A stretch of 64,000 nt of DNA from positions 62,001 to 126,000 of the IMG/VR virus record IMGVR_UViG_3300028840_006257. One strand, given 5' to 3'. Within the stretch, counting starts at the first letter, position 1, and each line of letters opens with the position of its first letter. Under the pieces are notes generated by a model. It worked only from the letters and a program-made list of their open reading frames with translations. It searched no databases and had not been told where the DNA came from. Below are positions 5,720 through 25,105 of this stretch, piece after piece. Made by a program: the position numbers and the translations under genes.

Positions 5720-5723
5720 GACG

Positions 5724-7809: not shown

Positions 7810-8289
7810 TTGATCAGGAGGCCCCGCGCTGTGACCCTCGAGGAACGCGTCCGCGCCGTCAAGGCGAAGTTTGAAGAAGCGGCCGACGAGCTGCTCGCAC
7901 TCGTCTCCGAGAGTCCGAGCCAGGTCTCGGACATCATGCGGATCGCGCGGCCGAGCACGGAGGACGGGCCCTCCTTCTCGGTCAGCAGCGAGCTCGTGGA
8001 GCGGCTGCAAGTGGAGGGCCACCCTCCCAGCGAGGACCGTCTCTCGCTTCCGTGGGAGGGTCGCTTTCTCCAGGTCTCGTCTCGCAGCGTCCGACACGAG
8101 AAGGAGCCCGTAGACGTCCTCATCCCGGAGGGAGAGGTCTTCGTCCTGGTCAACGTCTGGCCCGAGAACCCGGCGCGCACCCAGGCGTTTCGCGAGCTGA
8201 ACGCGGGAGCCGGGGGGCCCGAGGAGATTCAGCGGCGTCTGGCCGAGATCAGCGAGGCTGAAGAGGCTGGTCCATGTACTACTTCCTGA
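7810..8289 (+). CDS. Hypothetical protein
   Basis: 159-aa ORF filling the gap, TTG start, overlaps the next gene's start. Confidence 0.55.
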   Translation: MIRRPRAVTLEERVRAVKAKFEEAADELLALVSESPSQVSDIMRIARPSTEDGPSFSVSSELVERLQVEGHPPSEDRLSLPWEGRFLQVSSRSVRHEKEPVDVLIPEGEVFVLVNVWPENPARTQAFRELNAGAGGPEEIQRRLAEISEAEEAGPCTTS

Positions 8290-10516: not shown

Positions 10517-13500
10517 ATGGCAAATTTCCCTGGGACCATCTACGCGCCTCCTGGCGTCTACACCCGCACCAGGTTCCAGAGCCCCGTCTCTGGCGTCCTG
10601 GCGGGCGTTCGCATCCCCGTCTTCATCGGCACCGGCAACGAGCTGCTTCAGCAGCAGGACCTCGAGGTCATTCGTGGCTCTAGCAGCTCGGTCGATCAGC
10701 AGGTCCCGCAGGAGGACGAGACCGGTCGTGCCGTCGTGAGCATCTCCGATACGGGTCAGGTGACCCTCGGGGACTTCAACGGCGCGCGACAGCGCATCCA
10801 GGTCCGCAACTTCCCGATCACGAACGGAGACGGAAGCGGGACCACCGCCACGGACCCGAGTTCCATCCTCGTGACCATCAACGGCAGGCCCGACGTGGTC
10901 CTGAGCGTGGCTCGCGCCGACATCGGCGTCATCGAGATCAGCACGGCGCCCGACCTGAACGACGACGTGCGGGTGACGTACTTCTTCAAGCGGCACGACA
11001 CGCAGATGACGGACAACGTGTCGGACCAGGTGACTCCCGAGTCGGCCATCCTCGAGGGCGCCATCGGCAACCTCTTCGAGTTCACCTCGGACGACAACGT
11101 GTTCACCGTCACGGTGGACGACGACCAGAACCAGGTCGTGACGGCCACCTTCCCGACGGGGAGCGTCTCGGCCTCGACGGTCGTCTCGCTGATCAACGGC
11201 GCCGCGGCGGGAACGTCGCTCATCGCGTCGGAGTACACGAACAACTTCGGCCTCACGGCCGTTCGCCTCGTGGCGGACCGCAACCTCCTCATCGGGAGCG
11301 GTTCGGCCAACGTCGTCCTCGGCTTCACGCAGGGCCAGGCGACGAGCCGCAACAAGAACTTCGTGACGTTCAACGGTCCCATCGTGGACGGGACGAACGG
11401 GGGCATCACGACGACAGACACGTCCAAGGTCACGGTCCGCGTGAACGGGACCCAGGTCATCCCGACCGAGCTCGACGGACGCAACCGCACCGTGACGCTG
11501 CCCTTCGCGCCGGCCGCCGGCGATCTCGTCACGATTCAGTACTACTTCAACACGTGGCAGGACACCTTCGACTACCTGGCCAACATCAACGTGACGGAGG
11601 TCCTCCGCTGCGGGATCGTGCCGGGCAACAACGACTTCATCGAGCAGGCGGACTTCGTCCTGAAGGACGACCTGATCGTGTGGGGGAGCGCTTTCCTGGT
11701 GAGCGCCGGCGTGACGAGCGTCGGGGCCCCGGCCTTCGGGCCGACGCAGATCAGCGGCCTTCTGGTCGACAACCGCTGGTTCCTGTCCGAGACGACCGTC
11801 GTCGTGGACGACACGGTCTCCCCGCCAGTCGAGAACCGTCGGCAGTTCCAGCTCCCGGCCCAACCCACGACGGGCAACGGCCGCGACACACCGCTCGGCC
11901 AGAACGTCTTCCTGTCCATCTCCAACCGGCGGGTGGACCTGCCGACCAACAACCCGAACCTCGTCAAGGCCTACTGGGGTTGGAGCGTGCAGGACGCCCT
12001 CCAGCGCGGTCCCGTGACTGTGACCGAGGTCAAGGGGTCGATCATCACCCTCGAGGAGTCCGTTCCCGTCGGAGCGGGCGTCTGGGCGACCTTCTGGTAC
12101 AACATCCTCGTCGACGAGGAGTACACGGTCCAGGTCGAGACCTCGGGACCGTCCGGCATCGGCACCTACTTCCTCTTCGACGGCGACGGAAACCCCGTCT
12201 ACACGCCGACCTTCGGGAGCAAGGGCCCCGCCATGACCGGGGTGACGATTTCGTTCCCCTCGGGCTCCGAGCTCACCCCCGACGTGCACTTCGAGGGCGG
12301 CACGAGTGGTCCCGTCGAGGAGACGGTGACGGTCCAGTTCGCGGACAAGGACGCCACCATCGCGAAGTTCACGGTCGGCGGCAGCGGTCCCTACGCGTTC
12401 GTCTCGGGCGAGTCCGACAGGGCCCGGTTCATGATCGACAGCAGCGCCCTCGCGGGCGGCACGGCCGGGATCGACCTGTCCGCGCCGCACGGCATCCAGG
12501 GACTCGGTTTCAGCGCGAGCCTCCTCGGAGAGGAGATCCAGTACGACGAGGATACCGGCACCACGACCTACGACGTCCTCGCGGGCATCAACGACGACGT
12601 GTCGATGTCCGTGGACGGCGTGGTCATCTCGGTGACGGTCCCGGCCCAGACCGGCGTGAACGCGGACGCCTACGTCGAGGCCATCAACGCCGAGGCGAAG
12701 CTGTCCGCGAACTCTCCGTACCTCGACGGCACCACCCGGTTCCTCGGGACCACGGTCGTGACCGCGGGCGAGTACGACAAGCTCGTGTTCAACTACACGG
12801 GCGTCACCAACCCCGCGACGGGCCCGGTGACCGCCGTCATCGCCCCGGGAACGTACGCCTCCCCGGCCTTCATGGCCGCGGCGGTGGACACGGCCCTGAA
12901 CACGGCCATCGCGGCCCTGCCGGCGGGGTATGCGGGCCTCGACATCGCCGTGACTGCGAACGCCGACGGACAGATGCGGTTCACCTACAAGGCGGCCGAC
13001 ACCGACCTGGGCACCTCCGCGAGCGGGACCGTCACCGAGGTGGGAGCCATCGTGGGAGACACGATCACCATCGACACGGTGACCTTGACCGGGGCTCTGA
13101 CGCAGGTTTCGGGCGGTCTCGACTTCGACACCGGGCAGGCTCGGGCGACTCTCGTGCCGACCGGCGTGGAACCCGGCGACAACTTCACGATCAACGCGGG
13201 GGGTGGCCCGATCACCATCACCGCGTTGGGCGCCCAGACCCCGGGTGGCCTGAACTTCGATGAGGGGGACCAGGCGACGGGCACTATCACCGTCTCGGGA
13301 CCAATTCCGAACGACACCGTCACGATCAACGGGATCACGCTGACGGCGCTCGGAGCTCAGACCCCGGGTGGCCTGAACTTCGACGAGGGCACGCGAGCCA
13401 CCGGCACCGCCACGCTCACCGGGGTCCAGTACGGCGACACGATCTCCATCGACACCACCGCGGTCGGGGGAGGTCCCGTCACTCTGACGGCTAGCAACAC

Positions 13501-16500
13501 GCTGACCCCGGGCGGCCTTGACTTCAACGTCGGCACGGCGGCGACGGGAAGCATTCAGCTCGTGGGCGTGCGGCCCGCGACCATCGCGCCGTTCCCGGTG
13601 ACCGCGGCCGACACCGTCACCATCGGCGGGAACGTCCTGACGGCGAACGAGGGGCCGCGCACGCCGGGCGCCGACGACTTCGACGCCGGGACCAGGGCGC
13701 TCGGGAGCGTCACGGTCGTCGTGGACGCGCTCCCGGCGACGGGCGTCCTGTACGGCGACACGATCACCGTCGGGGGCATCGCCCTCGTCGCGGACAACGT
13801 CACGACTCCGGGTGGCCTGAACTTCGACGCGGGCACCCAGGCGTTCGAGGTGCTGACCGTGCTCCTGGCTCCGGGCGTCCCGACGCCTCCCGCGGTCATC
13901 ACTATCGACGTGGGCGGCGCGGCGGGCGGACCGTTCCCGCTCATCCCGGCGGGCGGTCCGCGCACCCCGGGCGCGAACGACTACGACGAGACGCTCGGGA
14001 CCACGATGGCGATAGCGGCCGACATCGCGGCGGCGATCAACGATCCGCTCAACGTGTTCTCCGCGTTCATGAGCGCGGCCGTCGGGCCCGGTCCTTCGGA
14101 CGTGACGTTCACGTGGAACGTGCCCGGCGTGGTCGCCAACGGCATCGTGAACCTGACGGCCGATCCGATGCTCTCTCCGCTCGTCGGCTTCGCCGGCGGC
14201 GTTGGCACGGAGGTCACGACCGCGACGGCCCTCGTCACGGCGCTCAGCGATCCGCTGAACGGGCTCACGGGCCTCATCCAGGCGCACAACACCGGCGGCG
14301 TTTCCAACGTCGTGAACCTGCAGGCCCTCACCCCGGGCCTCGCGGGCAACTCGATCAGCCTCGTCTCCACGGCGCCGGCGCGGCTCGTGCCGTCGGCGGC
14401 GACCATGGCGGGCGGCGTAGGCGACGACCTCACGGCCGCAACCGACGTGCAGGCGGCGGTGAACGACGTCGCCAACTCGTTCGCCACGGCGGTGACGGCC
14501 CTCACGACCGGAGACACGGCGGCCCTCACGGCGGTCACGCCCGGAGCCGTGGGCAACCTCATCACGCTGACCACGACGGCGGCCGGGAGGTTCGTGCTGT
14601 CCGCCGGGACGCTCACGGGAGGGGTCGGCGACGACATCTCGGCGGCGACGAGCCTGGTCGCGGCAATCTCCGACGCGGGCAACGGACTCGTCGGCGGCGT
14701 CGTCGCGGACAACGCCTCGGGCACGACCAACGTCGTCACCATCGACTCGTACACGCCGGGACTGGTCGGTAACGGCGTCCTCCTGGCGGAGTCCACGGCC
14801 GGAGCTCGGATCGCGCTCTCGGGCGCCACGCTGCTCGGCGGCGTCGGCGACAACACGACGGTCGCGGCCTCCATCGCGGCGGCCATCAACGACGTCGGAA
14901 ACGGCATCGTGACCTCCGTGACGGCCCTCGCGGCCCTGGCCGTCGTCACGATGACGGCGGTGACGCCGGGCAACGCCGGAAATTTGATCGGTACCACGTC
15001 GTCAGACGCGACGCGCCTGCTCATGTCGGGCCTGACCCTCGCCGGGGGCTCGGGAACCGACCTCAGCGTCGCCACGAGCATCGTCGCGGCGATCAACGAC
15101 CCGGGCAACGGGCTCGCCGTGGACGTGATGGCCGACAACGCCAGCGGAACCTCGACCACGGTCACCGTGTGGGACCTGACTCCGGGCGTGCTCGGCAACA
15201 CGAACACCATCGCCTCGTCCACGGGCACGCGGCTCCCGGTCTCGGGCGCCAACTTCACGGGCGGCGACACGGTGGTGGGCGTGGGTTCGAACATCGTCAC
15301 CGCGATCAACGACGCGGCCAACGGCCTGAACGGAATCGTGACGGCCGACAACAGCGGGGGCACCTCGGCGGTCGTGGATGTCACGGCGGCCGTGCCGGGC
15401 CCGCAGGGGAACTTCATCGTGCTCGCCTCGAGCGACGCGGGGCGCCTCCCGGTCTCCGGCGCGACCCTCACGGGAGGTGCCGGCCTCGGCGGCGGCGTGT
15501 TCGAGTTCCTCGACGCGGCGACGGTCGCGGAGGACTTCGCGATTCTCGCGGGCCTCTCCACGGACGCGCTGCCCAGCCAGGAGCAGACCAAGGTCGTCGA
15601 CGGAGATCTCGTGCGCCGGTTCACGGCGTCGGGCAGCTCCGGGCGCCTGATCTACGACCGGCTCGTCGTCCGCAACCGCGTCGTGCCCGGCAGCGGGTCG
15701 CTCGCGGCCGAGTCTCAGGTCGACCAGACCCAGCTCGTCATCGAGGGCACGAACGCCGAGGACGAGACGGGCCTCCAGCCGAGGGCATTCGGATCGGCGG
15801 GGATCGAGGCGACGATCCGGTCCGCCTCCTTGTACGGGGAGGTGGGCTTCAAGGACGGTCAGGTGGCGTCGGGGACGTACGGGGACTCGCGCGACGGACA
15901 GCCCGCGGTGATGTTCTACGCCCAGGGTGGCATCAATCCCCAGAACAACGTGTTCAAGTTCAACATCGACGGGACGCCCGTGACGGTGGTGTTCACGGAC
16001 GGCGTCGGGGCCGCGATTCCCGCGGCCGGGAGCGCCAGCGTGCCTCTCGGTCCGGTCACGACGGCGAACACGGTCCTCGCCCAGATCCTCGCCGGGGCGG
16101 TCGGCGCCGGACTGCCAGCCTCGGTCGTGCTCCAGGAGGGCGCGGGCACCCGACTGCTGAGCGCCACCGCCACCACGGACTCCGCCGTCACGATAGGTGC
16201 CGGGAACGCGAACGACGTCCTCGGCTTCTCCGACGACGCCACGGCGGCCCGGACCCTGGTCGAGCCCGAGGTCACGGCCTCCGCGCTCATGATGCACCAC
16301 AGCGCGTCCCTCAACGACGCGCTCCTGGACTACCAGAACCCCGACGCGACGTACTTCGCAGAGCAGGCCCTCGCGGGCGTCGAGACCGACTCGAGCAACG
16401 CGCAGTTCCTCTTCATCGAGTCGCAGGCCAACAACATCGTGGGCCTCGGGGCCTCGTCCAACATTACGTTCCTCACCGCCACGAGTGACTCGTGGCTGCG

Positions 16501-17965
16501 CACGGGGACGGGAGTCGGCGTGGCGACGGGCGAGGGGGCCGCGGGCGAGAGCGGATTCCAGGGCTACTACGTCACGAGCTCGGACCCGGTCGACGGCTCG
16601 GGTTCCGCCAACACGTCGTCCCTCAACAACGGCACGGGCCAGGACGGCATCATCGGCACGACGTACCGCGACGCGGTGACGGGCCTCACCTTCACCGTCC
16701 TCGAGCGCGAGGGGGGCTCCGCCTACCCGACGGGCGCGGGGGCCTGGTTCACCTTCGAGGTGCGCAAGCTCGTCACCACGGACGCGAACATCCCGGTCAA
16801 CTCCATCCCGGGCCTCGAGATGACGGTCGCGAATACCGAGGGATCCACGATCCCGCAGGGAGACACGGCCATCGTCGAGACGTTCGACCGGGGCGGCCAG
16901 GAACCCGCGGTGGGGGACTCCTACTTCGTGACCTACAACTTCTCGAAGACGGAGGCCGACTTCGAGACGATGCTGTTCACGAATCAGCGGGCCGTGGAGG
17001 CGAACTACGGGGAGGTCAACCCGGACAACCCGGTGTCCCTCGCCGCCTACCTCGGCTTCCTGAACGGCGGGGTCGTCCTCGCCATCAAGCAGGTGCCGAA
17101 GATCCCGGGTTCGAACCAGGCGAGCACCCAGAGCTACCTCGACGCGCTCGACGACCTCAGGGGACCGCTGCCGGGAGGCGCCACGCTGGACACGATCACG
17201 CCGCTCAAGGGCGACGACGAGGACCTGTTCCTCTCCCTGTCGAACCACTGCGACATCCAGTCGAGCATCCGGTACCGCTCCGAGCGGACCGGGCTGATCG
17301 GGGTCTCGTCGGGGACGCAGCCGACGGACGTCGGCGGCATCGCGCAGCAGATCGCGAACACGCGCATCAGGCTCGTGTACCCGGACATCGTGACCCTCAC
17401 GATCCAGGACGCCCTCGGGAACGACAAGCAGTTCCTCGTGGACGGGACCTTCCTCGCGGCGGCGCTCTCGGGCAACCGAGCCGCCCCGAGGATCGACGTG
17501 GCGACCCCGTGGACGAGGGCCCGCATCGTCGGCTTCGACGAGCTCGCCCGTACCCTCGACGCGGTCGAGCAGAACCAGGTGGCCGTACAGGGCGTCACCG
17601 TCCTGGACCAGCGCGGCACGATCATCCGAGTCCGTCAGGGCCTCACGACGGACATGAGCAACATCCTCACCAAGCTCCCGACGGTCATCACCATCGCGGA
17701 CGAGGTGCAGCGCTCCGCTCGCAGGGATCTCGACAGGTTCATCGGGGTCAAGTTCCTGCCGGGCATCCTCTCGGAGATCGAGGGCCAGCTCGCGACCACC
17801 ATGAAGGCGCTCAAGAACGCCGAGATCATCGCGGCGTTCACGGGCATCCAGGCGCGGACCACCAACGACCCGACGCTGGTGGAGATCGAAGCATTTTATC
17901 AGCCGATTTTCCCGCTTTTATACATCGTTATAACCTTCAACCTTCGCAGCAACCTTGGAGGTTGA
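10517..17965 (+). CDS. Contractile tail sheath protein, greatly enlarged (2482 aa)
   Basis: N-terminal APPGVYTRT; C-terminal sheath core (VLAIKQVP...RTGLIG...RIRLVYP...VRQGLTTD...IADEVQRSARRDLDRFIG...EIEAFYQPIFPLLYIVITFNL). Tube gene lies downstream. Confidence 0.92.
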   Translation: MANFPGTIYAPPGVYTRTRFQSPVSGVLAGVRIPVFIGTGNELLQQQDLEVIRGSSSSVDQQVPQEDETGRAVVSISDTGQVTLGDFNGARQRIQVRNFPITNGDGSGTTATDPSSILVTINGRPDVVLSVARADIGVIEISTAPDLNDDVRVTYFFKRHDTQMTDNVSDQVTPESAILEGAIGNLFEFTSDDNVFTVTVDDDQNQVVTATFPTGSVSASTVVSLINGAAAGTSLIASEYTNNFGLTAVRLVADRNLLIGSGSANVVLGFTQGQATSRNKNFVTFNGPIVDGTNGGITTTDTSKVTVRVNGTQVIPTELDGRNRTVTLPFAPAAGDLVTIQYYFNTWQDTFDYLANINVTEVLRCGIVPGNNDFIEQADFVLKDDLIVWGSAFLVSAGVTSVGAPAFGPTQISGLLVDNRWFLSETTVVVDDTVSPPVENRRQFQLPAQPTTGNGRDTPLGQNVFLSISNRRVDLPTNNPNLVKAYWGWSVQDALQRGPVTVTEVKGSIITLEESVPVGAGVWATFWYNILVDEEYTVQVETSGPSGIGTYFLFDGDGNPVYTPTFGSKGPAMTGVTISFPSGSELTPDVHFEGGTSGPVEETVTVQFADKDATIAKFTVGGSGPYAFVSGESDRARFMIDSSALAGGTAGIDLSAPHGIQGLGFSASLLGEEIQYDEDTGTTTYDVLAGINDDVSMSVDGVVISVTVPAQTGVNADAYVEAINAEAKLSANSPYLDGTTRFLGTTVVTAGEYDKLVFNYTGVTNPATGPVTAVIAPGTYASPAFMAAAVDTALNTAIAALPAGYAGLDIAVTANADGQMRFTYKAADTDLGTSASGTVTEVGAIVGDTITIDTVTLTGALTQVSGGLDFDTGQARATLVPTGVEPGDNFTINAGGGPITITALGAQTPGGLNFDEGDQATGTITVSGPIPNDTVTINGITLTALGAQTPGGLNFDEGTRATGTATLTGVQYGDTISIDTTAVGGGPVTLTASNTLTPGGLDFNVGTAATGSIQLVGVRPATIAPFPVTAADTVTIGGNVLTANEGPRTPGADDFDAGTRALGSVTVVVDALPATGVLYGDTITVGGIALVADNVTTPGGLNFDAGTQAFEVLTVLLAPGVPTPPAVITIDVGGAAGGPFPLIPAGGPRTPGANDYDETLGTTMAIAADIAAAINDPLNVFSAFMSAAVGPGPSDVTFTWNVPGVVANGIVNLTADPMLSPLVGFAGGVGTEVTTATALVTALSDPLNGLTGLIQAHNTGGVSNVVNLQALTPGLAGNSISLVSTAPARLVPSAATMAGGVGDDLTAATDVQAAVNDVANSFATAVTALTTGDTAALTAVTPGAVGNLITLTTTAAGRFVLSAGTLTGGVGDDISAATSLVAAISDAGNGLVGGVVADNASGTTNVVTIDSYTPGLVGNGVLLAESTAGARIALSGATLLGGVGDNTTVAASIAAAINDVGNGIVTSVTALAALAVVTMTAVTPGNAGNLIGTTSSDATRLLMSGLTLAGGSGTDLSVATSIVAAINDPGNGLAVDVMADNASGTSTTVTVWDLTPGVLGNTNTIASSTGTRLPVSGANFTGGDTVVGVGSNIVTAINDAANGLNGIVTADNSGGTSAVVDVTAAVPGPQGNFIVLASSDAGRLPVSGATLTGGAGLGGGVFEFLDAATVAEDFAILAGLSTDALPSQEQTKVVDGDLVRRFTASGSSGRLIYDRLVVRNRVVPGSGSLAAESQVDQTQLVIEGTNAEDETGLQPRAFGSAGIEATIRSASLYGEVGFKDGQVASGTYGDSRDGQPAVMFYAQGGINPQNNVFKFNIDGTPVTVVFTDGVGAAIPAAGSASVPLGPVTTANTVLAQILAGAVGAGLPASVVLQEGAGTRLLSATATTDSAVTIGAGNANDVLGFSDDATAARTLVEPEVTASALMMHHSASLNDALLDYQNPDATYFAEQALAGVETDSSNAQFLFIESQANNIVGLGASSNITFLTATSDSWLRTGTGVGVATGEGAAGESGFQGYYVTSSDPVDGSGSANTSSLNNGTGQDGIIGTTYRDAVTGLTFTVLEREGGSAYPTGAGAWFTFEVRKLVTTDANIPVNSIPGLEMTVANTEGSTIPQGDTAIVETFDRGGQEPAVGDSYFVTYNFSKTEADFETMLFTNQRAVEANYGEVNPDNPVSLAAYLGFLNGGVVLAIKQVPKIPGSNQASTQSYLDALDDLRGPLPGGATLDTITPLKGDDEDLFLSLSNHCDIQSSIRYRSERTGLIGVSSGTQPTDVGGIAQQIANTRIRLVYPDIVTLTIQDALGNDKQFLVDGTFLAAALSGNRAAPRIDVATPWTRARIVGFDELARTLDAVEQNQVAVQGVTVLDQRGTIIRVRQGLTTDMSNILTKLPTVITIADEVQRSARRDLDRFIGVKFLPGILSEIEGQLATTMKALKNAEIIAAFTGIQARTTNDPTLVEIEAFYQPIFPLLYIVITFNLRSNLGG
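13016..15483 (+). repeat. Seven N-half repeats (ending TPGGLNFDxG-like) followed by seven C-half repeats (AAIND...TPG..GN...TLxGG) within the sheath
   Basis: N-half loop motifs near 13105, 13238, 13361, 13505, 13661, 13805 and 13964. C-halves contain AINDPLN, ALSDPLN, AVNDVAN, AISDAGN, AINDVGN, AINDPGN and AINDAAN. Confidence 0.9.
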
Positions 17966-17974
17966 TCTAAGCGG

Positions 17975-18002
17975 TTGCGGCAGTCCTACCGGGTGGTAGG
18001 AT
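17975..18002 (+). promoter_or_regulatory. Possible sigma70-type promoter (TTGCGG-N16-TAGGAT, extended -10 TG) overlapping hairpin TCCTACC-GGGT-GGTAGGA
   Basis: -10 ends at 18002 and the GTG start is at 18009 with no RBS, which fits a leaderless transcript. 7-bp perfect inverted repeat at 17984-18001. Confidence 0.35.
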
Positions 18003-18008
18003 TGGCAC

Positions 18009-20606
18009 GTGACCCCTGAACAACTCGAACAGGTTCTTGCGGCGTTTGCGTCCGACGACGCGGCCGCCGTGATTGCGAAATGCACAGGTGTGCCACGGGG
18101 TCACGTCTACAAGCTCTGGAAAGAACAGTTCGGACCGCGAGCTCTTCGGGATCGGGGCAACCGACTTCGCGGCCTGGCGAAGAGTCGTTCGGGAAACTCG
18201 GCCAGAACTGAGGTTCGCGACGCCGCCATCGCTGCCTTCGAAGAGGGGGAGGCGATGAAGGCCGTCGCGCTCCGGTTGGGGGTTCACTACACGCAGATTC
18301 GTGAGTGGTGGGTTGAGGTTTACGGGGTGGAGACGGTGGCCGAGCGGGGCCGTGCCCTTCAGAGGACTCGAACTCGTGCTAACCATGAGAGGCTCAGGGG
18401 AAAAGCGCGAAAGGTCCGCGTTATCTCGGTACCTTGTGACGCGTGCGGTCGGGATCTTGAGGTTTCTACCATCTCGGCGGCTAAAAGTTCGCGAATCGTG
18501 TGTTCCTCCTGCGAGCAGTCGGAACGAGGGGCCGACACCGCGTGTCCCGTCTGTGGTCGACTCTGCGTCGGGAAAAGGGGACTCGCGAGCCACTTAGGGA
18601 GCGCCAAAGATGAGGTCCATCGCGAGTATCTTCGGCACCAGGAAGAAGAGCGTCTTGGAGAGGAGGGTCACGGGCACGTGGTGTGCCTTGAGTGCGGCCA
18701 TCGTGCTCGGAATCTGTGGAAGCATCTTGAGGCGGAACACGAGATGACACCCTCCGAGTATGTCGGAAAGTGGCCGGGTGCGTGCTGGCGTACCGAGGCG
18801 GCAGAACGAGCACGAGTGCGACGGTCCTCTGAGGCACGTTCGGCCAGCGGCTTTGGAAAGGGGACGCGGAAGATCGTGGCATGTCCCCAGTGTTCAACGG
18901 AGGTCGAGGTCTCTCGTTTTGCGGGGCCGCTTCACGATCTACGCTGTGACGAGTGCAGGGCAGAGGACGAACTGAAGACATGGTGTGGGAAGAGCGAACC
19001 CGAGGACTACGTCTCCTGTCGAGAGTGTGGATTTCGGGCAGAATTTCTCATCTCTCATGTCCGATCCGCACACGACCTTGCAGAGTACGTGACTCGTCAT
19101 CCGGATGCGCCGTTCACGGCGTGTCGGGCTGGTCAGCGGAAATCACCGAGTACGAAGCTCGTGCTAACGAAGGAGCAGCTGGTGCCCTTCATGGATGAGG
19201 GGCGCGTTGTCGCGGCCGCCGCGGCGAGGGCCTTCGGGTGCGCGCAGTTTCAAATTCGTCGGGCGTGCAACGAGCTGGGGCTGCAAACCCGACGGCGGCT
19301 CGCCTGGCAGAAAGCGGTCCTGGATCGTGCCGCGTCGTATCTGGGCGTCGGCTACAAGTCGGAGTGGACCGATTCAAGGATCGTCAACGAGGCAACCGGC
19401 CGGAAGCTTCACTACGATGGCTTCTTTCCTTCCCGGAACTTGATCATCGAGGCTCACGGGGACCAGCATTTCTTCTTCATCGAAGCGTGGCACCGCACCT
19501 ACGAGGAGTTCGAACGCCTGCGCGAGTTGGATCGCTTCAAGCTCAGGCGCGCTCAGGAGCTCGGGTTTGCCGTGAAGGTCGTCCGGTACGGGGACGCGAT
19601 TCACGAGAGAGGCTTCTGGAGACGGCTCCTGGAGGACGACCGGGCGCTGTGGGCCAACAAGTCGGAGAGCGAGCGCCGGGACGACGTGGAGAGGGTGCTG
19701 CGGGAACTGAGGGTCTCGGGATTCCCCGACATCCTTCCCTCCCCGAAGACACGCGCCGAATTCACGAAACTCCAGAGACAGACGATCTATCTGGACTCGT
19801 CGGGAACGATCCGTCCACAGACGACGCGAGGCACGACGGCGTGTGCCTCTTTTTTTCCGAACAGGTACCGGGCCCGTTACAAGGGGGCGCCGAGCGTGCT
19901 GGAGGCGTGGGACGACGACGACAGGTTGCGCAGGGCAGTTCGGGTACAGATGGAGGCGGGACATCCCACCACCCCTCACCGTGTGCTGCGGGCCCTCCAG
20001 ATGATCTGTCGAACGCCCTCCGTGTTTCGTCCCGGAGTCGCCAAATACGTCTGTCAGACCTACTGTCGCGAGGGGGGGACCGTCTGGGATCCGTGTGCCG
20101 GCTACGGGGGGCGTCTTTTCGGCGCGATGGCAACGCACGTGGGGGCCTACCTGGGCACGGACGTCGAGCCCGAGATCGTCGAGGGAAATCGGAGATTGGC
20201 GCAGGAGATCGGCGTCTCCGATCGATGTCAAGTGGTTCAGGCGGCGGCCGAAGAGTTCGATCCCGAGTCCCCCCTCGATTTGGTATTCACGTCTCCACCG
20301 TACTACGACCTTGAAAGCTACGGGTCGCGGTCCGATGCTCGGGCCTACTCCGACGTGGGCGAGTGGCTTGAGCGTTTCCTGGTGCCCGTGATCAACAAGG
20401 GCGCCGAGCATCTCAGGTCCGGCGCCTACTTGATCCTGAATCTTCCGGCCAAACCCCGCGCCGGCGTCGTCCTTGCCGACGAGGCCGTCAAGATCGCCGT
20501 ACGAGCTGGTCTCGGGGTTCAGCCCGTCGTTTTCATGCCCGTCAGGCGCCTTCGGACCTCTCGATCTGCATGGAAGGACCCGCTAGTCGTTTTTCGCAAG
20601 CCGTAG
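18009..20606 (+). CDS. Fusion: HTH and Zn-finger array, Vsr/DUF559-like PD-(D/E)xK endonuclease, and amino-DNA methyltransferase (SPPY)
   Basis: Repeated CxxC/C2H2 units (CPVCG...SHL, CLECG...KHLEAEH, CRECG...SHVRSAH). Nuclease motif LHYDGFF...IIEAHGDQHF (19407-19472). MTase motif I DPCAGYGG (20088) and motif IV FTSPPYY (20286-20306). Codon usage is more AT-rich than the flanks. Confidence 0.85.
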   Translation: MTPEQLEQVLAAFASDDAAAVIAKCTGVPRGHVYKLWKEQFGPRALRDRGNRLRGLAKSRSGNSARTEVRDAAIAAFEEGEAMKAVALRLGVHYTQIREWWVEVYGVETVAERGRALQRTRTRANHERLRGKARKVRVISVPCDACGRDLEVSTISAAKSSRIVCSSCEQSERGADTACPVCGRLCVGKRGLASHLGSAKDEVHREYLRHQEEERLGEEGHGHVVCLECGHRARNLWKHLEAEHEMTPSEYVGKWPGACWRTEAAERARVRRSSEARSASGFGKGTRKIVACPQCSTEVEVSRFAGPLHDLRCDECRAEDELKTWCGKSEPEDYVSCRECGFRAEFLISHVRSAHDLAEYVTRHPDAPFTACRAGQRKSPSTKLVLTKEQLVPFMDEGRVVAAAAARAFGCAQFQIRRACNELGLQTRRRLAWQKAVLDRAASYLGVGYKSEWTDSRIVNEATGRKLHYDGFFPSRNLIIEAHGDQHFFFIEAWHRTYEEFERLRELDRFKLRRAQELGFAVKVVRYGDAIHERGFWRRLLEDDRALWANKSESERRDDVERVLRELRVSGFPDILPSPKTRAEFTKLQRQTIYLDSSGTIRPQTTRGTTACASFFPNRYRARYKGAPSVLEAWDDDDRLRRAVRVQMEAGHPTTPHRVLRALQMICRTPSVFRPGVAKYVCQTYCREGGTVWDPCAGYGGRLFGAMATHVGAYLGTDVEPEIVEGNRRLAQEIGVSDRCQVVQAAAEEFDPESPLDLVFTSPPYYDLESYGSRSDARAYSDVGEWLERFLVPVINKGAEHLRSGAYLILNLPAKPRAGVVLADEAVKIAVRAGLGVQPVVFMPVRRLRTSRSAWKDPLVVFRKP

Positions 20607-20659: not shown

Positions 20660-21055
20660 ATGCGGGACGACCTGTACGCGGGCTGGCATCTGCTCTTCGA
20701 TGCCTTCGTAGACCCCGAGCACGCCGAGCGTCTGGACGACGCCGAGTTTCTTGAACGGTTATTCCGAGATCTCGTGGAAGTGCTCGACATGGAGATCCTC
20801 GGGGAACCGGCGTTCAAGAAGATTCCCTGCGATCCCTCCAGGCTGGACACGGAGCATGACGAGGGCGGCGTGACGGGTACCGTCATCGTCACCACGAGCC
20901 ACCTGAGCATCCACACGTGGCCCCTGCGGAAACGCTTCTGCCTCGACGTGTTCTCGTGCAAGCAGTTCGATCACCTCGCGGTCGAGAGGCTCGTGAGGGC
21001 ACGCCTCCGCGTCGAGAGGCGGTCGAGTCGCTGGATCCCACGGACGTGGCCGTGA
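20660..21055 (+). CDS. speD: S-adenosylmethionine decarboxylase proenzyme family (class 1B)
   Basis: GWHLLFD...GGVTGTVIVTTSHLSIHTWP...LDVFSC; RBS AGGAGG before ATG 20660; 131 aa. Confidence 0.85.
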   Translation: MRDDLYAGWHLLFDAFVDPEHAERLDDAEFLERLFRDLVEVLDMEILGEPAFKKIPCDPSRLDTEHDEGGVTGTVIVTTSHLSIHTWPLRKRFCLDVFSCKQFDHLAVERLVRARLRVERRSSRWIPRTWP

Positions 21056-21333: not shown

Positions 21334-22125
21334 ATGGCTAACAAAGACCTCGCCCCCGCGAACGGCGTACAGGGCTCGAGCTACATCTACGACTTCGGAA
21401 CGTCCCCGCAGACGCGAACGGCGGTGAGTCAGAAGGTCCGTCTCCTGACGCCGGCCTACGGCTCGGATGCGAACCTCCTGTTCCAGATGGGGGTCCTGAG
21501 CTCCTTCACGCCGAACGAGACGCGCACGATCGACACCCTGCGCGGGATCGGCTTCGGCGACATGATCGCCGAGCTCGTGCCGTCGGTGACGGAGGCGATG
21601 ACGGCCGGCTTCGAGCGGGCACTCCTGTACCTCTCGAACCTCTGGCAGGCCACGGGCTACGCGGGGGGCGCCTCGGGCCCCGTCAGGAGCCTGCGGCACC
21701 ATCGCTGGCCCTTCGACATCGAGCAGCAGCTCGTGTTCTCGACCCTCGCCGACTACGACCTCACGGGTCAGGCGGGCGTCGGGTTCAACGGGGGCGGCGG
21801 CACCTTCGACGGGGGCGTGAAGGAGATCGTCTACCCGCAGGTCACCAACGATCCCAACAACTTCCCCGGCGACCTCCGGGGTCACACGGCGATCATCACG
21901 CTCTACGAGACCTGCTGGTTCAACTCCTGGTCCCTCACGAACGTGAGCCGCGACACGGGGATGCTGATGGAGACCGGGGACGTGACCATCAGCGACGTCC
22001 ACGACTTCAGCTCCGAGTACGGAGAGTTCCTCGCCACCGGCAACGACCCGACCATCGGTCAGGTCGGGTCCGTCCGGTTCAACGTGGGCGATCAGCGGAC
22101 CGCCTCCGACTTCATCACGACGTAA
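21334..22125 (+). CDS. Tail tube protein
   Basis: 263 aa, downstream of the sheath, RBS GAGGAAGG. Pattern QMGVLSSFTPNETRTIDTLRGIG...PFDIEQQ...TLYETCWFNSWS matches gp19-type tube strands. Confidence 0.8.
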   Translation: MANKDLAPANGVQGSSYIYDFGTSPQTRTAVSQKVRLLTPAYGSDANLLFQMGVLSSFTPNETRTIDTLRGIGFGDMIAELVPSVTEAMTAGFERALLYLSNLWQATGYAGGASGPVRSLRHHRWPFDIEQQLVFSTLADYDLTGQAGVGFNGGGGTFDGGVKEIVYPQVTNDPNNFPGDLRGHTAIITLYETCWFNSWSLTNVSRDTGMLMETGDVTISDVHDFSSEYGEFLATGNDPTIGQVGSVRFNVGDQRTASDFITT

Positions 22126-22352: not shown

Positions 22353-22408
22353 CTCTTGCGCTGTGAAAACGACCCACCGGCTTGCTCCACGACAGAGTGG
22401 AGAGAGTC

Positions 22409-23857
22409 ATGGTCACTTTAAAAGCCCTTGAGGCCGCGATCGTTCAGGTCGAGCGCATCCGCGATTTCGAGTATTCGTTCGAAGCCAATGACGTCGAGAT
22501 CACGCTGAGACCTCTGCGTCCCGACGAAGAGACCGAGGTCCAGCGATATGCCCAGATCGCGATGGAGGACTTGGAGGAGGGTGAGGCGACTCAGGCGGCC
22601 TTCGCTGACTTCATGGATAGGATGCGGCATGCTTCGTTGGCGTTCGCCATCGTGCAGATTGGGGACCTGGATCTTCGGGACGTCGAGTACGTCGAGACTG
22701 GCGAGCAGGACGAACAGGGCAGGCCCGTCTCGGTGCCGAAGTGGGAGGGTCTCCGGAACATGATCGGGCAGGAGTGGACGCGCTCAATGCTCAGTCAAGT
22801 GTTCGCGCGATTCGGAGAACTTCTCGAACGAGTGGAGCTGAGAGCGTCCAAAAGCGTGAAATTCGACGCCGTCGACCTGGACGAGGAGATCGCTCGTGTG
22901 GAACGGCGGCTCGCCGAGCTCCGCGCCGCGAAGCAGACTCTTGAGGCATCTCCTGAGGAGGACAACGTACGCAAACAGCAGCGTCTCCTGACGGAGATTC
23001 AGAGGACTCGGCAGCAGCAACATGACAACATCCGCGGCGGCACGGCGACGGGGGACGTCGAGGAGTCCGCGAGCGCGTCGGAGCCCTCAGGAGAGAAAGT
23101 CGAGGCGTCGAAACCCGCACCGAGCGACGGTTCGGCAGTCGAACCCCGGCCCTCCTCGGCTGAGACGACCTCTCGACCCGTGGGAGAGCGGCCCTCGGCT
23201 TTCCCCGATGCCGGGCCTCCGCCTGAAGTCGATCGGCCGGACGCTTCTGAGGGGCCTCTCGGCGGCGCCGAGACGCAGGACCAGGAAGGTTCCGAATCCC
23301 CGTCGAAGCGTACCGAAGCCGTCGATTCACAGAACATTCCACTTCCACATGGAGGAGACTCCTTCTTTGATCCCACTGACCCAGATGAGGCCATGGAGAT
23401 CGAGGCCCATCGTCAGGAGATGCTGCATCGGCAGCACATCCTCCGACAACGCGAACGTAGGCTGGAGGAACAGAGACGCGAGGCTTTGGGGATGCCGAGT
23501 GCGGCTGAGGCGGCTCGAAAGGCGCAAGAGGCCCAGAGACAGGCGCAGGTCCCGCAGAAGGCAGCTCGGCTCGATCCTCGCACGAGCTCCCTGAGAGAGG
23601 CCGCCAACGTCTCCGATGCCGTCTTCGACGCAGGCACCGGCAGCATTCAGTCGGCGCGCCCCCCAACTCCTCGATCGCAGAGATCCGGTAAGGGGACGAC
23701 GGCCACCTTACACGGCAAGCCCGTCTACAAGATGCCCCCACAGACTCTTGAGAGGAAGGAGGCCACCGGAACGCCGGATCAAGGCGAACCCATGGTGCCG
23801 ATCAACCCGCCTCCGGGATCGAGGAACGAGCGATTCAGAGGTCCTGGCGAACGGTAG
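22409..23857 (+). CDS. Tail assembly chaperone-like protein with long low-complexity C-terminal region
   Basis: Lies between the tube and tape measure genes. Acidic folded N-terminal ~170 aa (ITLRPLR...SLAFAIVQIG) then a Pro/Ser/Glu-rich tail. ATG 22409 after GGAGAG. Confidence 0.6.
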   Translation: MVTLKALEAAIVQVERIRDFEYSFEANDVEITLRPLRPDEETEVQRYAQIAMEDLEEGEATQAAFADFMDRMRHASLAFAIVQIGDLDLRDVEYVETGEQDEQGRPVSVPKWEGLRNMIGQEWTRSMLSQVFARFGELLERVELRASKSVKFDAVDLDEEIARVERRLAELRAAKQTLEASPEEDNVRKQQRLLTEIQRTRQQQHDNIRGGTATGDVEESASASEPSGEKVEASKPAPSDGSAVEPRPSSAETTSRPVGERPSAFPDAGPPPEVDRPDASEGPLGGAETQDQEGSESPSKRTEAVDSQNIPLPHGGDSFFDPTDPDEAMEIEAHRQEMLHRQHILRQRERRLEEQRREALGMPSAAEAARKAQEAQRQAQVPQKAARLDPRTSSLREAANVSDAVFDAGTGSIQSARPPTPRSQRSGKGTTATLHGKPVYKMPPQTLERKEATGTPDQGEPMVPINPPPGSRNERFRGPGER

Positions 23858-23860
23858 AGA

Positions 23861-25105
23861 ATGCAGCTTCCCAAGACCACCTCAGACGAGAGGACGTCCA
23901 TTTATGACGACGTGCGAGCTCTGATCGTACCCGGATTCATTGCTCATCCTCTTGAGGTGCACGGAGCGCGTTTCGTCATGCGCTCACTCGATGCTTCGGA
24001 CTGGCATCTTTTGAGGTTCAGAGCACACGGTCTCCGGGATCGAGAGTGGATCGCGTGGGTGGTCGCATCGTCGATCTGGATGGCCGACGGCATCGTCTAC
24101 ATGGGTGAAGAAGAGGCGCTGCGAATGCTCGTCGAGATGTGTCGCAGGCTCCCGACGACGGTTCTCGACGACCTTTATGGAATCCTCGATGGTCTCATGC
24201 GGAGGATGCGGCGTGCCACAGAGATAATCGAAGCGTTCCTGTACGAGGCGGAGTCGCGTCAGCTCTGGCGCAGCGAGGGAAACGCCGTCTTGGCCCGCGT
24301 TGGAAGCCCAGGTCTGCTGCGTTCGCACAACCCTGTTTTGCAGCTGTGGATCTTCTTCAATCAGATGGAAGACGCTCGCGAGCATGACGACTACCTCTGG
24401 TCCTTGGCCAAGTTCGTGGCAGGTCCGCACGTCCCGAAGGGTGTCAAGAAGCTGAACGCCAAGGACAAGCAACGAGAGACCGACCTGCGGAATAGACGGC
24501 AGGGCGTGATGGATCGCGCCTACTACGAGACGAGAGGCGTCATTCCCAGGCGAGAACGGGATGCCAACGGGAAGAAATCGAGACGGCGATTCCAGGAAGT
24601 ACACATGGCCGAGTCTCCCGAGGAGCTCAGGGAGGAAATGCGTCGATGGGTCCTCGGAGTAAAGGACGACCATGATCGTGTCGTCGACGGGGTAAAGGCT
24701 CGGATCAAACACGAGGTCGAGATGCACCGACGAGAAGATGCGGAGCGTCGGATAGCTCTCCAGCGTGCGATGGAGGAGGAGGGCATGACCCGAACCGGGC
24801 TCGTCCCACTCGTCGGCGAGGCGGGACGAGAGTTCATCGAACGCATGAAGGCTCGCGTACCTGGTCTGTCGAGAGTGCACGACGAAAAGGGACACAACAG
24901 CGCTTACGAGAAGTACATCGCCAACAATCCCGAGGCAGGAGAACTTCGCGTTGCCGAAGATGGCCGCATCATCTCGGAGCGCCCCGTCGATCCTCGTTTG
25001 CTTGAGATGATGCGCGCCCCGGGGACCGGCGAAGAAACGCCGCTACAACGCCTAGTCGAAAAGCGTCGTCCCGTGGCGGTGATCGAGGAGGACGAGGAGC
25101 GGTAA
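23861..25105 (+). CDS. Second tail assembly chaperone-like protein
   Basis: 414 aa, directly before the tape measure gene; helical and charged. Confidence 0.55.
   Translation: MQLPKTTSDERTSIYDDVRALIVPGFIAHPLEVHGARFVMRSLDASDWHLLRFRAHGLRDREWIAWVVASSIWMADGIVYMGEEEALRMLVEMCRRLPTTVLDDLYGILDGLMRRMRRATEIIEAFLYEAESRQLWRSEGNAVLARVGSPGLLRSHNPVLQLWIFFNQMEDAREHDDYLWSLAKFVAGPHVPKGVKKLNAKDKQRETDLRNRRQGVMDRAYYETRGVIPRRERDANGKKSRRRFQEVHMAESPEELREEMRRWVLGVKDDHDRVVDGVKARIKHEVEMHRREDAERRIALQRAMEEEGMTRTGLVPLVGEAGREFIERMKARVPGLSRVHDEKGHNSAYEKYIANNPEAGELRVAEDGRIISERPVDPRLLEMMRAPGTGEETPLQRLVEKRRPVAVIEEDEER

What the first reader, a model, noticed from the sequence alone, without database searches (positions are those of the whole stretch)
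17888..20606. Homing-endonuclease-like/methyltransferase fusion inserted after the sheath, with an apparently recoded sheath 3' end
Seen: an 865-aa gene splits the usually adjacent sheath and tube genes. It joins HTHs, about six Zn-binding units, a Vsr/DUF559-like nuclease (D...E-x-H-G-x-x-H) and a complete amino-MTase (motif I before SPPY, suggesting m4C or m6A). The last 25 sheath codons (17888-17962) switch abruptly to A/T-ending codons (TTT TAT ATT CTT TTA GTT ATA), unlike the other ~2450 codons. Known: free-standing phage homing endonucleases cut a neighbouring conserved gene and co-convert it to a resistant allele. Inference: this is a mobile selfish element targeting the sheath 3' end. 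The fused MTase may give self-protection, a single-chain restriction-modification activity against co-infecting phages, or anti-restriction.
Basis: partly seen in the sequence, partly recalled or inferred. Interest (0 to 1): 0.72.

Follow-up and report, generated by a model that had tools for sequence, protein, structure and literature searches.

The report
Homing endonuclease–methyltransferase fusion after phage sheath
A selfish, mobile nuclease gene that also carries a DNA methyltransferase sits just after the tail-sheath gene of a huge environmental phage. The end of the sheath gene has been rewritten with silent changes wherever this element is present, the expected mark of a homing endonuclease protecting its own genome.

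Summary
ORF 18009-20606 (865 aa) follows a 2482-aa tail sheath in a fragment of a huge phage (213 kb, GC 65%). It has N-terminal HTHs, five Zn units, an HTH plus Vsr-like nuclease with conserved E-D-x-H-D residues, and a C-terminal SPPY amino-methyltransferase. Of the last 25 sheath codons, 13 end in A/T against 1.4 expected (P<5e-7).

Among 60 distinct related sheath loci the element is present or absent sporadically (at least 14 gains or losses). Element-free relatives such as L012 keep G/C-ending codons and a terminator after the sheath. Excess A/T-ending codons track the element: Mann-Whitney p about 1e-5, and 12 phylogenetically independent pairs give about 8 concordant, 0 discordant. In close +/- pairs, synonymous divergence spikes only in the last 25 codons.

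This is most likely a free-standing Vsr-like homing endonuclease with a recoded, immune target in the sheath 3' end. A hairpin hides its ribosome-binding site and start codon.

The methyltransferase is an optional module. Many elements at this site lack it, and a homologous module is fused to LAGLIDADG endonucleases after a capsid-like gene in the same phage group. Its role is unresolved, and cleavage, homing and methylation are untested.

The parts
10517..17965 (+). Giant tail sheath gene (2482 aa). The conserved sheath core is in the last ~450 aa, and the C-terminal peptide ...AFYQPIFPLLYIVITFNLRSNLGG is near-invariant in relatives.
17888..17962 (+). Last 25 sheath codons, recoded to rare A/T-ending synonymous codons. 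This is the proposed immune (cleavage-resistant) version of the homing target and/or a co-conversion tract.
17915..17934 (+). Recoded 20-nt core CTTTTATACATCGTTATAAC. It is identical in L011, has two changes in L018, and is unique in the window.
17970..18017 (+). RNA hairpin (-27.3 kcal/mol, z -3.3) that pairs the Shine-Dalgarno GGTAGGA (17995-18001) and the GTG start (18009). It is conserved with compensatory changes in L011 and L018. It replaces the terminator found at element-free sites.
18009..20606 (+). Element ORF, 865 aa: DNA-binding modules + Vsr-like nuclease + methyltransferase.
18009..18434 (+). Residues 1-142: two helix-turn-helix-like modules (HTH_23 match at 72-108).
18435..19073 (+). 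Residues 143-355: five Zn-binding units (C4 ribbon, C2H2, C2H2 Ros/MucR-type, C4 ribbon, C2H2). Residues ~257-377 are an extra block present only in the window's sublineage.
19143..19289 (+). Residues 379-427: helix-turn-helix directly before the nuclease (HTH_28 match; resembles the Mos1 transposase HTH in the model).
19293..19664 (+). Residues 429-552: Vsr-like (restriction-endonuclease-fold) nuclease. Conserved residues are E452, D470, (H483), H487, D508, K511.
19743..20603 (+). Residues 579-865: helical lead-in plus class-I SAM methyltransferase. Motif I is D694-P-C-A-G-Y-G-G-R and motif IV is T761-S-P-P-Y. The motif order is circularly permuted relative to beta-class DNA methyltransferases.
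20660..21055 (+). S-adenosylmethionine decarboxylase gene. The start is inferred from homologues, and the longest ORF starts at 20570. The gene is itself variably present in relatives.
21334..22125 (+). Highly conserved 263-aa virion structural protein, probably the tail tube. It directly follows the sheath in L034 and L054.

Best explanation
The 865-aa gene is a free-standing homing endonuclease gene of the Vsr-like (EDxHD-type) kind. It has colonised the intergenic site just after the tail-sheath gene in a clade of huge phages.

Inferred mechanism: during co-infection, the N-terminal HTH and zinc-finger modules bind the conserved, G/C-ending nucleotide version of the sheath 3' end in an element-free phage, and the nuclease cuts it. 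Repair from the element-bearing genome then copies in the element together with the adjacent sheath end. The element-bearing allele escapes cutting because up to 14 of its last 25 codons carry silent changes. In a GC3 0.93 gene such changes are mostly to rare A/T-ending codons.

Expression is probably kept low and tied to sheath translation. The element has replaced the sheath terminator. Its ribosome-binding site and GTG start are locked in a hairpin that begins 5 nt after the sheath stop codon, which a terminating ribosome would melt.

The C-terminal SPPY DNA amino-methyltransferase is an optional cargo module shared with LAGLIDADG homing endonucleases of the same phages. Its most likely role is to modify the carrier phage's DNA, either as protection from its own or other nucleases or as an anti-restriction benefit that favours keeping the element.

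Shown here: domain identities, sporadic distribution, and recoding linked to the element. Inferred: cleavage, the target position, homing, coupling and methylation.
For: 1. Nuclease. The model (pLDDT 87.6) matches Vsr (Z 8.5, 109 residues), the DUF559 protein 3hrl (7.8) and the homing endonuclease I-Bth0305I (7.5). E452, D470, H487, D508 and K511 are conserved in 20-21 of 21 element copies, and position 483 is variable, as is the 'x' of EDxHD (PMC3239194). More distant relatives carry homing-endonuclease-associated repeats, AP2 and Ros/MucR modules with the nuclease at the C-terminus.

2. Presence/absence. The element is present or absent at one site. L012, L020-23, L027, L031, L034 and L054 lack it, with the sheath followed by a terminator, SAM decarboxylase or the tube-like gene. 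At least 14 state changes are needed on a 60-tip sheath tree. Several deeply diverged element lineages occur within one tight sheath clade.

3. Recoding. The window has 13 A/T-ending codons against 1.36 expected. Element-bearing loci differ from empty plus other loci with Mann-Whitney p 1e-5. Of 12 independent pairs, about 8 are concordant and 0 discordant (p about 0.008). Synonymous divergence in the last 25 codons is raised in +/- pairs: L035/L036 0.46 vs 0.18 (p 0.003), L084/L080 0.67 vs 0.31 (p 0.001), L018/L012 (p 0.006). It is not raised in -/- pairs, for example L036/L045 0.12 vs 0.47. Different element lineages carry different recodings.

4. Hairpin. It covers the SD and start codon and is conserved, with 4 compensatory pairs.

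5. Methyltransferase. Motifs I and IV are intact in all methyltransferase-bearing copies. It resembles DNA methyltransferases: 2zie 8e-6, PADLOC mad2 1.7e-11, MTase_II 2.7e-6. A homologous module is fused to LAGLIDADG endonucleases after a capsid-like gene, again sporadically.
Against: - No biochemical or genetic test exists.
- The nuclease has no significant sequence match to Vsr, DUF559 or I-Bth0305I. Only fold and residue pattern connect them.
- The target has not been located. The recoded stretch could instead serve expression of the element: recoding is strongest where the terminator is missing (the window's lineage and L013/L017) and weak in L014 and L024.
- Some element-bearing loci show no excess (L014, L059, L063). 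One locus with no detectable element does (L052, z 3.7).
- The gene keeps its position across relatives down to 41% identity, which also fits long vertical inheritance.
- No empty-site junction was seen in the three metagenomes that hold this phage, though only assembled contigs were available.
Confidence: 0.65

Rival explanations
1. The recoded A/T-rich sheath end is a cis-regulatory feature for expressing the downstream gene. It could be an embedded promoter, or a structure-free or slow-translation zone that lets sheath-translating ribosomes open the hairpin. On this view it is not a cleavage-immune target. The element may still be mobile.
For: Recoding is strongest where the sheath terminator is absent and the element abuts the sheath (window, L011, L018, L013, L017). 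It is weaker where a terminator is retained (L010, L014). The hairpin over the SD and start suggests translational coupling. A 20-nt recoded core is identical in the window and L011 although other synonymous sites differ by about 30%.
Against: No sigma-70-like promoter is present, and the motif occurs nowhere else in the window. No related k-mer is enriched in the genome's intergenic regions. Different element lineages use different recodings of the same peptide, where a shared signal would be expected. Rare codons 5-25 codons before the stop would not hold a ribosome on a hairpin that lies after the stop.
Confidence: 0.2
2. The protein is a single-chain restriction-modification-like weapon. 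The nuclease cuts unmethylated DNA of the host or of competing phages at short sites, and the fused methyltransferase protects the carrier. Its position after the sheath would be incidental.
For: It has a nuclease plus an intact DNA-type amino-methyltransferase in one chain, in the nuclease-then-methyltransferase order of Type IIG/IIL enzymes. The nuclease domain of DrdV appears among the fold matches (Z 5.5). PADLOC hits to mad2 and Type II methyltransferases.
Against: At least 13 dereplicated loci carry the same N-terminal region and nuclease at the same site with no methyltransferase, and they show equally strong recoding (L013, L017). There is no target-recognition domain after the methyltransferase, and no hit to Type IIG models. 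The long array of HTH and Zn modules fits a long, rare target. The element-linked recoding of the neighbouring gene is unexplained by this view.
Confidence: 0.1
3. The gene is a domesticated, vertically inherited DNA-binding regulator or DNA-modifying enzyme of this phage clade with an inactive nuclease remnant. The codon anomaly would be an unrelated local effect such as amino-acid composition, chance or donor composition.
For: Its position after the sheath is conserved in relatives down to 41% identity. Ros/MucR and HTH modules are typical of regulators. The element's GC3 (0.71) equals that of many neighbouring genes.
Against: The catalytic residues are conserved in all lineages. There are at least 14 gains or losses. 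The codon anomaly survives conditioning on amino acids. It is absent in element-free relatives. The recoded stretch is also more A/T-rich than the element itself.
Confidence: 0.05

Closest known systems
EDxHD / Vsr-like homing endonucleases (prototype I-Bth0305I of Bacillus phage 0305phi8-36; the family also includes phage 'Hef'; PMC3239194)
   Same: Both have a C-terminal Vsr-like nuclease fold and the conserved E, D, H, D residues with a variable third position. Both have N-terminal modular DNA-binding regions that include an HTH. Both are phage-borne, and free-standing members are known. I-Bth0305I tolerates most single substitutions in its target, which would explain why immunity needs many silent changes.
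   Different: No significant sequence similarity was found. I-Bth0305I is intron-encoded in recA, uses NUMOD motifs, and is 266 aa. Here there are five Zn units, extra HTHs, a free-standing gene after the sheath, and a fused methyltransferase.
Free-standing homing endonucleases of T4-like phages (SegF, SegG, MobE, Hef: 'intronless homing'; from my knowledge of the literature, not re-read here)
   Same: The gene is inserted between conserved genes and varies in presence among relatives. The target lies in the neighbouring conserved gene of element-free phages. Resistance comes through sequence polymorphism, with co-conversion of flanking markers. Expression is restrained by RNA structure over the ribosome-binding site.
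   Different: Those are GIY-YIG or HNH enzymes (Hef is Vsr-like) of about 200-250 aa with no methyltransferase. Here the evidence is only comparative.
Type IIG/IIL single-chain restriction-modification enzymes (MmeI, DrdV)
   Same: One polypeptide carries an N-terminal restriction-fold nuclease followed by an amino-methyltransferase with motif I before (N/S)PPY.
   Different: Those have a C-terminal target-recognition domain, recognise short sites, are cellular defence genes and are not tied to one insertion site. None of these features is seen here.
Beta-class N4C/N6A DNA methyltransferases (Pfam N6_N4_Mtase; e.g. TTHA0409, PDB 2zie) and the MADS methyltransferase mad2
   Same: They give the best sequence matches to the C-terminal domain. 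They share the SPPY catalytic motif and the F-x-P...DP-x-x-G-x-G SAM-binding region.
   Different: The two halves align in swapped order, a circular permutation, and the Pfam match is below threshold. The domain has no separate recognition domain and is fused to a homing endonuclease.

Membership tests
Free-standing homing endonuclease gene (intronless homing) | Encodes a nuclease domain of a recognised homing-endonuclease type with its catalytic residues intact | tested here: met
   Vsr-like fold (Z 8.5 Vsr, 7.5 I-Bth0305I). E452, D470, H487, D508 and K511 are conserved in 20-21 of 21 copies.
Free-standing homing endonuclease gene (intronless homing) | Sporadic presence or absence at the same site among close relatives | tested here: met
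   Empty sites in L012, L020-23, L027, L031, L034 and L054. At least 14 changes on the sheath tree.
Free-standing homing endonuclease gene (intronless homing) | Element-bearing allele differs from the element-free allele at a nearby conserved sequence (immune target or co-conversion) | tested here: met
   The A/T-codon excess and the synonymous-divergence spike in the last 25 sheath codons are tied to the element. That this stretch is the actual target is inferred.
Free-standing homing endonuclease gene (intronless homing) | Site-specific cleavage of the element-free allele, and gene conversion in mixed infection | not testable with these tools
   Needs enzyme assays or crosses. The contig-level read check found no empty-site junction.
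EDxHD (I-Bth0305I) family | Vsr-like catalytic fold | tested here: met
EDxHD (I-Bth0305I) family | Conserved E...D...x...H...D active-site residues | tested here: met
   E452, D470, x483 (H/Q/M), H487, D508. The D-to-H483 spacing of 13 residues equals that of Vsr D51-H64, and H487 lies 17 residues after D470 against 18 for Vsr H69 (PMC3239194). The equivalence rests on pattern and fold, not on a residue-level superposition.
EDxHD (I-Bth0305I) family | Detectable sequence homology to family members, Vsr or DUF559 | tested here: not met
   No Pfam Vsr or DUF559 hit at E<=0.01. The profile found no PDB match to 3r3p or Vsr at E<=10. Best treated as a separate lineage of the Vsr-like superfamily.
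DNA amino-methyltransferase (N6A/N4C, (D/N/S)PPY) | Class-I SAM-methyltransferase fold with motif I and motif IV (S)PPY | tested here: met
   pLDDT 93.7. Matches Trm11, TrmN and PrmC-type (D/N)PPY enzymes. Both motifs are conserved.
DNA amino-methyltransferase (N6A/N4C, (D/N/S)PPY) | Specific relationship to DNA rather than RNA or protein methyltransferases | tested here: inconclusive
   The best sequence hits are DNA methyltransferases (2zie 8e-6; N4C methyltransferase 0.01; PADLOC mad2 1.7e-11 and MTase_II 2.7e-6; PHROG DNA-methyltransferase families). Pfam N6_N4_Mtase is below threshold, and the nearest folds are tRNA and protein methyltransferases.
DNA amino-methyltransferase (N6A/N4C, (D/N/S)PPY) | SAM binding, methylated base and recognition sequence | not testable with these tools
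   The complex prediction with SAM was not folded by the tool. A methylome is needed.
Type IIG/IIL restriction-modification enzyme | Target-recognition domain after the methyltransferase, and similarity to known IIG enzymes | tested here: not met
   The model ends with the Rossmann fold plus a short beta-hairpin. PADLOC gives only methyltransferase-type hits.

The most novel reading that the evidence does not exclude
The fused methyltransferase is a portable self-immunity or addiction module for homing endonucleases. Recruited by the endonuclease's own DNA-binding array, it would methylate the homing site or off-target sites in the carrier genome. That would make the fusion a natural intermediate between homing endonucleases and restriction-modification systems. 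The module has been exchanged between unrelated nuclease families (Vsr-like after the sheath, LAGLIDADG after the capsid-like gene) within one group of huge phages.
Probability: 0.25. Interest if true: 0.82.

Novelty: new variant of a known kind. Interest (0 to 1): 0.62.

Why it matters
Free-standing homing endonucleases and immune, recoded targets are textbook for T4-like phages. They have not been described for the huge uncultured phages. In the papers I could search I also found no natural homing endonuclease fused to a DNA methyltransferase.

Here the same methyltransferase module rides on two unrelated endonuclease families at two structural-gene loci. This raises a testable question about how homing endonucleases and restriction-modification systems are related, and whether methylation can replace or supplement target recoding as self-protection.

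The dataset of about 60 natural alleles gives an unusually clear comparative footprint of target-site immunity written in rare codons of an essential, highly expressed gene. Practically, a long-site nuclease coupled to a site-directed methyltransferase could interest genome engineers.

Tried and rejected
- DNA-level search of the locus against GenBank phages found no match.
- Pfam, PHROG and NCBIfam gave nothing for the sheath or the five other structural-looking ORFs tested (8274-9533, 21334-22125, 22382-23857, 23861-25105, 25109-28336). A profile of the sheath C-terminus found no PDB match. The sheath was identified by tblastn to annotated phages instead.
- Amino-acid composition or chance as the cause of the codon switch was rejected by conditioning on amino acids.
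- Donor-composition carry-over was rejected. The stretch (GC3 0.48) is more A/T-rich than the element (0.71), and the same excess is seen in the lower-GC relative L018.
- For an embedded promoter, I found no sigma-70-like site, no second copy of the motif, and no enriched intergenic k-mer resembling it. This does not exclude a phage-specific promoter.
- The terminator-like hairpin plus T7 run inside the gene (19828-19859) is not conserved in L011, L018, L024, L003 or L008, so it was set aside.
- Tunturi_5, the nearest cultured relative, has unrelated genes between the sheath and the tube-like gene. Its 827-aa protein is not a homologue.
- Reads were available only as assembled contigs. The element is intact in three metagenomes. 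One 2566-nt 'skip' has only 20 nt of support on one side and was disregarded.
- The complex prediction with SAM was not folded by the tool.
- Tandem Repeats Finder found no DNA-level repeats in the sheath.
Full report
**Context.** The window is positions 62001-126000 of a 213-kb IMG/VR virus record that CheckV rates about 40% complete, so it is a fragment of a very large phage. GC is about 65%. Almost all genes lie on the + strand. Relatives of the gene in question sit on contigs of 140-530 kb.

**The observation.** ORF 10517-17965 encodes 2482 aa with no Pfam, PHROG or NCBIfam match.
- Its last 450 residues match annotated tail sheaths by tblastn: Tunturiibacter phage Tunturi_5 (5e-45), Bacillus phage G gp178 (7e-30) and some 200 mycobacteriophages. 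It is therefore a giant sheath.
- ORF 18009-20606 (GTG start, 865 aa) follows after 43 nt.
- The gene after that is an S-adenosylmethionine decarboxylase (Pfam 4.6e-19). Its true start, judged from homologues, is about 20660.
- The next strongly conserved structural gene, 21334-22125, is the probable tube. It matches a Tunturi_5 'virion structural protein' (3e-39), and in relatives L034 and L054 it directly follows the sheath.

**The codon switch is real.** Thirteen of the last 25 sheath codons end in A/T, against 6.6% elsewhere in the gene.
- Given the amino acids and the gene's own usage, 1.36 are expected. No other 25-codon window exceeds 7, and none of two million simulations reached 13.
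- The stretch holds the gene's only TTT (1 of 93 Phe codons), its only TTA (1 of 194 Leu codons) and 3 of its 6 CTT.
- It is the longest AT-rich island in the 64-kb window.

**Anatomy of the 865-aa protein.**
- Residues 1-142 carry HTH-like modules (HTH_23).
- Residues 143-355 hold five Zn units: two C4 ribbons and three C2H2, one matching ROS_MUCR at 5e-12.
- Residues 379-427 are another HTH.
- Residues 429-552 fold (pLDDT 87.6) like Vsr endonuclease (Z 8.5, 109 residues, 20% identity), the DUF559 protein 3hrl (7.8) and the catalytic domain of the homing endonuclease I-Bth0305I (7.5).
- E452, D470, H487, D508 and K511 are conserved in 20-21 of 21 element copies from all lineages, while position 483 varies (H/Q/M). 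This reproduces the E-D-x-H-D pattern that defines the I-Bth0305I family and corresponds to Vsr E25, D51, H64, H69, D97 (PMC3239194).
- Sequence searches do not connect the domain to Vsr, DUF559 or I-Bth0305I. I call it a Vsr-like lineage rather than a proven family member.
- A profile search of 1.84 billion representative proteins found 6357 relatives. Most are 300-580 aa with the nuclease at the C-terminus. Sampled ones carry Ros/MucR fingers, AP2 domains or 'homing endonuclease associated repeats'.
- Residues 579-865 fold (pLDDT 93.7) as a class-I SAM methyltransferase nearest to (D/N)PPY amino-methyltransferases such as Trm11, TrmN and PrmC.
- By sequence, the closest solved relative is the beta-class DNA methyltransferase 2zie (8e-6). 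It aligns in two pieces in swapped order, so the domain is a circular permutant with motif I before SPPY.
- PADLOC gives mad2 (1.7e-11) and Type II methyltransferase models (2.7e-6).
- A DNA N6A or N4C methyltransferase is the likeliest reading, but the substrate is not established.

**Comparative evidence for mobility.**
- The closest homologues (64-41% identity) all lie directly after a giant sheath.
- A scan of IMG/VR with a profile of the sheath C-terminus returned 80 loci. In these the element is a presence/absence polymorphism.
- L012 has a sheath C-terminus 87% identical and a tube-like protein 96% identical to the window's, yet it runs sheath, strong intrinsic terminator, SAM decarboxylase, tube-like gene, with no element.
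- L020-23, L027, L031, L034 and L054 are also empty.
- On a tree of 60 distinct sheath sequences, built without the last 25 residues, presence/absence needs at least 14 changes.
- Within the tight clade that holds the window (85-87% sheath identity) there are at least three deeply diverged element lineages. These are the window's type (L026, L011, L018), a second methyltransferase-bearing type (L010, L014) and a type without methyltransferase (L013, L017). The first two have their nearest relatives in more distant sheath clades (L024, L028).

**The recoding tracks the element.**
- For each dereplicated locus I computed the excess of A/T-ending codons in the last 25 codons, relative to that locus's own amino-acid-conditioned usage.
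- Element-bearing loci have a median z of 1.9 (window 15.2, L017 11.9, L011 7.8, L018 5.9, L013 5.4). Empty loci have -0.55, and loci with other genes downstream have -0.65.
- Mann-Whitney gives p 5e-4, 1e-4 and 1e-5 for the three comparisons.
- Of 12 phylogenetically independent pairs that differ in element state, about 8 go the same way and none the other way (sign test about 0.008).
- The sheath peptide itself is unchanged. Element-free alleles share a G/C-ending version: CCG GTG TTC CCG CTG CTC TAC ATC GTC.
- The window's lineage has CTT TTA TAC ATC GTT ATA, and the methyltransferase-less lineage has TTG CTG TAT ATT GTG ATC.
- In +/- pairs, the synonymous difference rate in the last 25 codons exceeds the upstream rate. 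L035/L036 is 0.46 vs 0.18 (p 0.003), L084/L080 is 0.67 vs 0.31 (p 0.001), L018/L012 has p 0.006 and L011/L012 has p 0.017.
- In -/- pairs the rate is equal or lower, for example L036/L045 at 0.12 vs 0.47.
- Exceptions exist. L014, L024, L059 and L063 carry an element without excess, and low-GC genomes give the test no power. L052 has an excess with no detected element.

**Expression signals.**
- In the window, L011 and L018 the terminator seen at empty sites is gone.
- Instead a hairpin (17970-18017, -27.3 kcal/mol, z -3.3) pairs the Shine-Dalgarno GGTAGGA and the GTG start. Four base pairs show compensatory changes among the three loci.
- The hairpin begins 5 nt after the sheath stop codon. 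I infer that a ribosome terminating on the sheath message opens it, so the endonuclease is made at low level and only when the sheath is translated.
- From my knowledge of T4 homing endonuclease genes, sequestered ribosome-binding sites are usual for them.

**The methyltransferase as a module.**
- At least 13 dereplicated loci carry the DNA-binding region and nuclease at this site without any methyltransferase, and they include strongly recoded ones. The methyltransferase is therefore not required for immunity.
- The same domain (42-47% identical) is fused to LAGLIDADG_2 endonucleases in proteins of about 650 aa.
- These sit after a very conserved 290-aa capsid-like gene in the same phage group, in some cases on the same contigs as sheath loci. 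They are again sporadic (16 present, 33 absent) and again occur with or without the methyltransferase. Recoding of the capsid gene's end is weak there.
- I found no description of such fusions in the searchable literature, which is not proof that none exists.

**Judgement.**
- The best explanation is a free-standing Vsr-like homing endonuclease whose carrier genomes hold a recoded, presumably cleavage-resistant sheath 3' end (confidence 0.65).
- I-Bth0305I tolerates most single substitutions in its target (PMC3239194 abstract). For an enzyme of this kind, immunity would need many silent changes. In a gene with GC3 0.93 these changes are necessarily mostly to rare A/T-ending codons.
- The main rival (0.2) is that the recoded block serves expression of the element. 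It fits the link between recoding and loss of the terminator, but it has no positive motif evidence.
- A general restriction-modification-like weapon (0.1) and a domesticated regulator (0.05) fit the data less well.
- Cleavage, target position, homing and methylation are all untested.

**Limits.**
- All relatives are metagenomic contigs, and several are short, so 'absence' was scored only where at least 400 nt of downstream sequence was available.
- The Mann-Whitney tests ignore phylogeny, which the independent-pair test addresses.
- Read data were contigs only.
- The residue equivalences to Vsr rest on fold, spacing and conservation, not on a residue-level superposition.

Noticed in passing
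window 5619-6731 (+); also L003, L004, L008: The phage encodes an actin-like protein matching Pfam Volactin (9.8e-75), a family named after a haloarchaeal actin homologue. It is conserved a few genes upstream of the sheath in distant relatives.
   Followed up: no
window 1739-4468 (+): A 909-aa ORF contains an intein with a LAGLIDADG homing endonuclease (Intein_splicing, LAGLIDADG_3, Hom_end_hint). This is a second selfish element in the window.
   Followed up: no
window 20660-21055 (+): An S-adenosylmethionine decarboxylase gene lies directly after the SAM-dependent methyltransferase fusion. It is itself variably present in relatives and only about 50% identical between phages whose tube-like protein is 96% identical. 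A functional link to SAM use or depletion is possible but untested.
   Followed up: partly
window 10517-17965 (+), roughly residues 800-1750: The sheath is about twice to five times normal length. Read by eye from the translation, it contains many diverged copies of two repeat types, (T)PGGLNFD-type and GGVGDD..AA..V.AAINDP.NGL-type. Tandem Repeats Finder sees nothing at the DNA level. Sheath length varies from 1421 to 2482 aa among relatives.
   Followed up: partly
window 19828-19859 (+): A terminator-like hairpin plus a T7 run lies inside the element's coding sequence at the nuclease/methyltransferase boundary. It is built with rare TCT TTT TTT codons. It is not conserved in L011, L018, L024, L003 or L008.
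   Followed up: yes
L010 7439-11770: In this relative the site holds a 325-aa HTH fragment related to the element's N-terminus, then a complete C-5 cytosine DNA methylase (Pfam 9e-71), then a 685-aa endonuclease-methyltransferase element. This looks like nested or successive insertions at the same site.
   Followed up: partly
L090-L169 (capsid-like gene loci); L006 10001-11944: LAGLIDADG endonucleases, with or without the same methyltransferase module, are sporadically inserted after a capsid-like gene that is 87-94% identical across the phage group. L168 appears to hold three tandem LAGLIDADG-like matches.
   Followed up: partly
window 39056-50077 and 30573-35984 (+): Very large ORFs of 3673 and 1803 aa lie downstream in the same strand block. 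They were not analysed.
   Followed up: no
L037 5952-6015; L052 7290-7356: L037 is a contig that ends 60 nt after the sheath. It shows the window-type recoding (CTT TTA TAC ATC) and the start of a CCTAC...GTAGG hairpin, so it probably carried an element. L052 has a strongly recoded sheath end (z 3.7), but only reverse-strand ORFs and no detected element lie downstream. This may be a lost or replaced element.
   Followed up: partly
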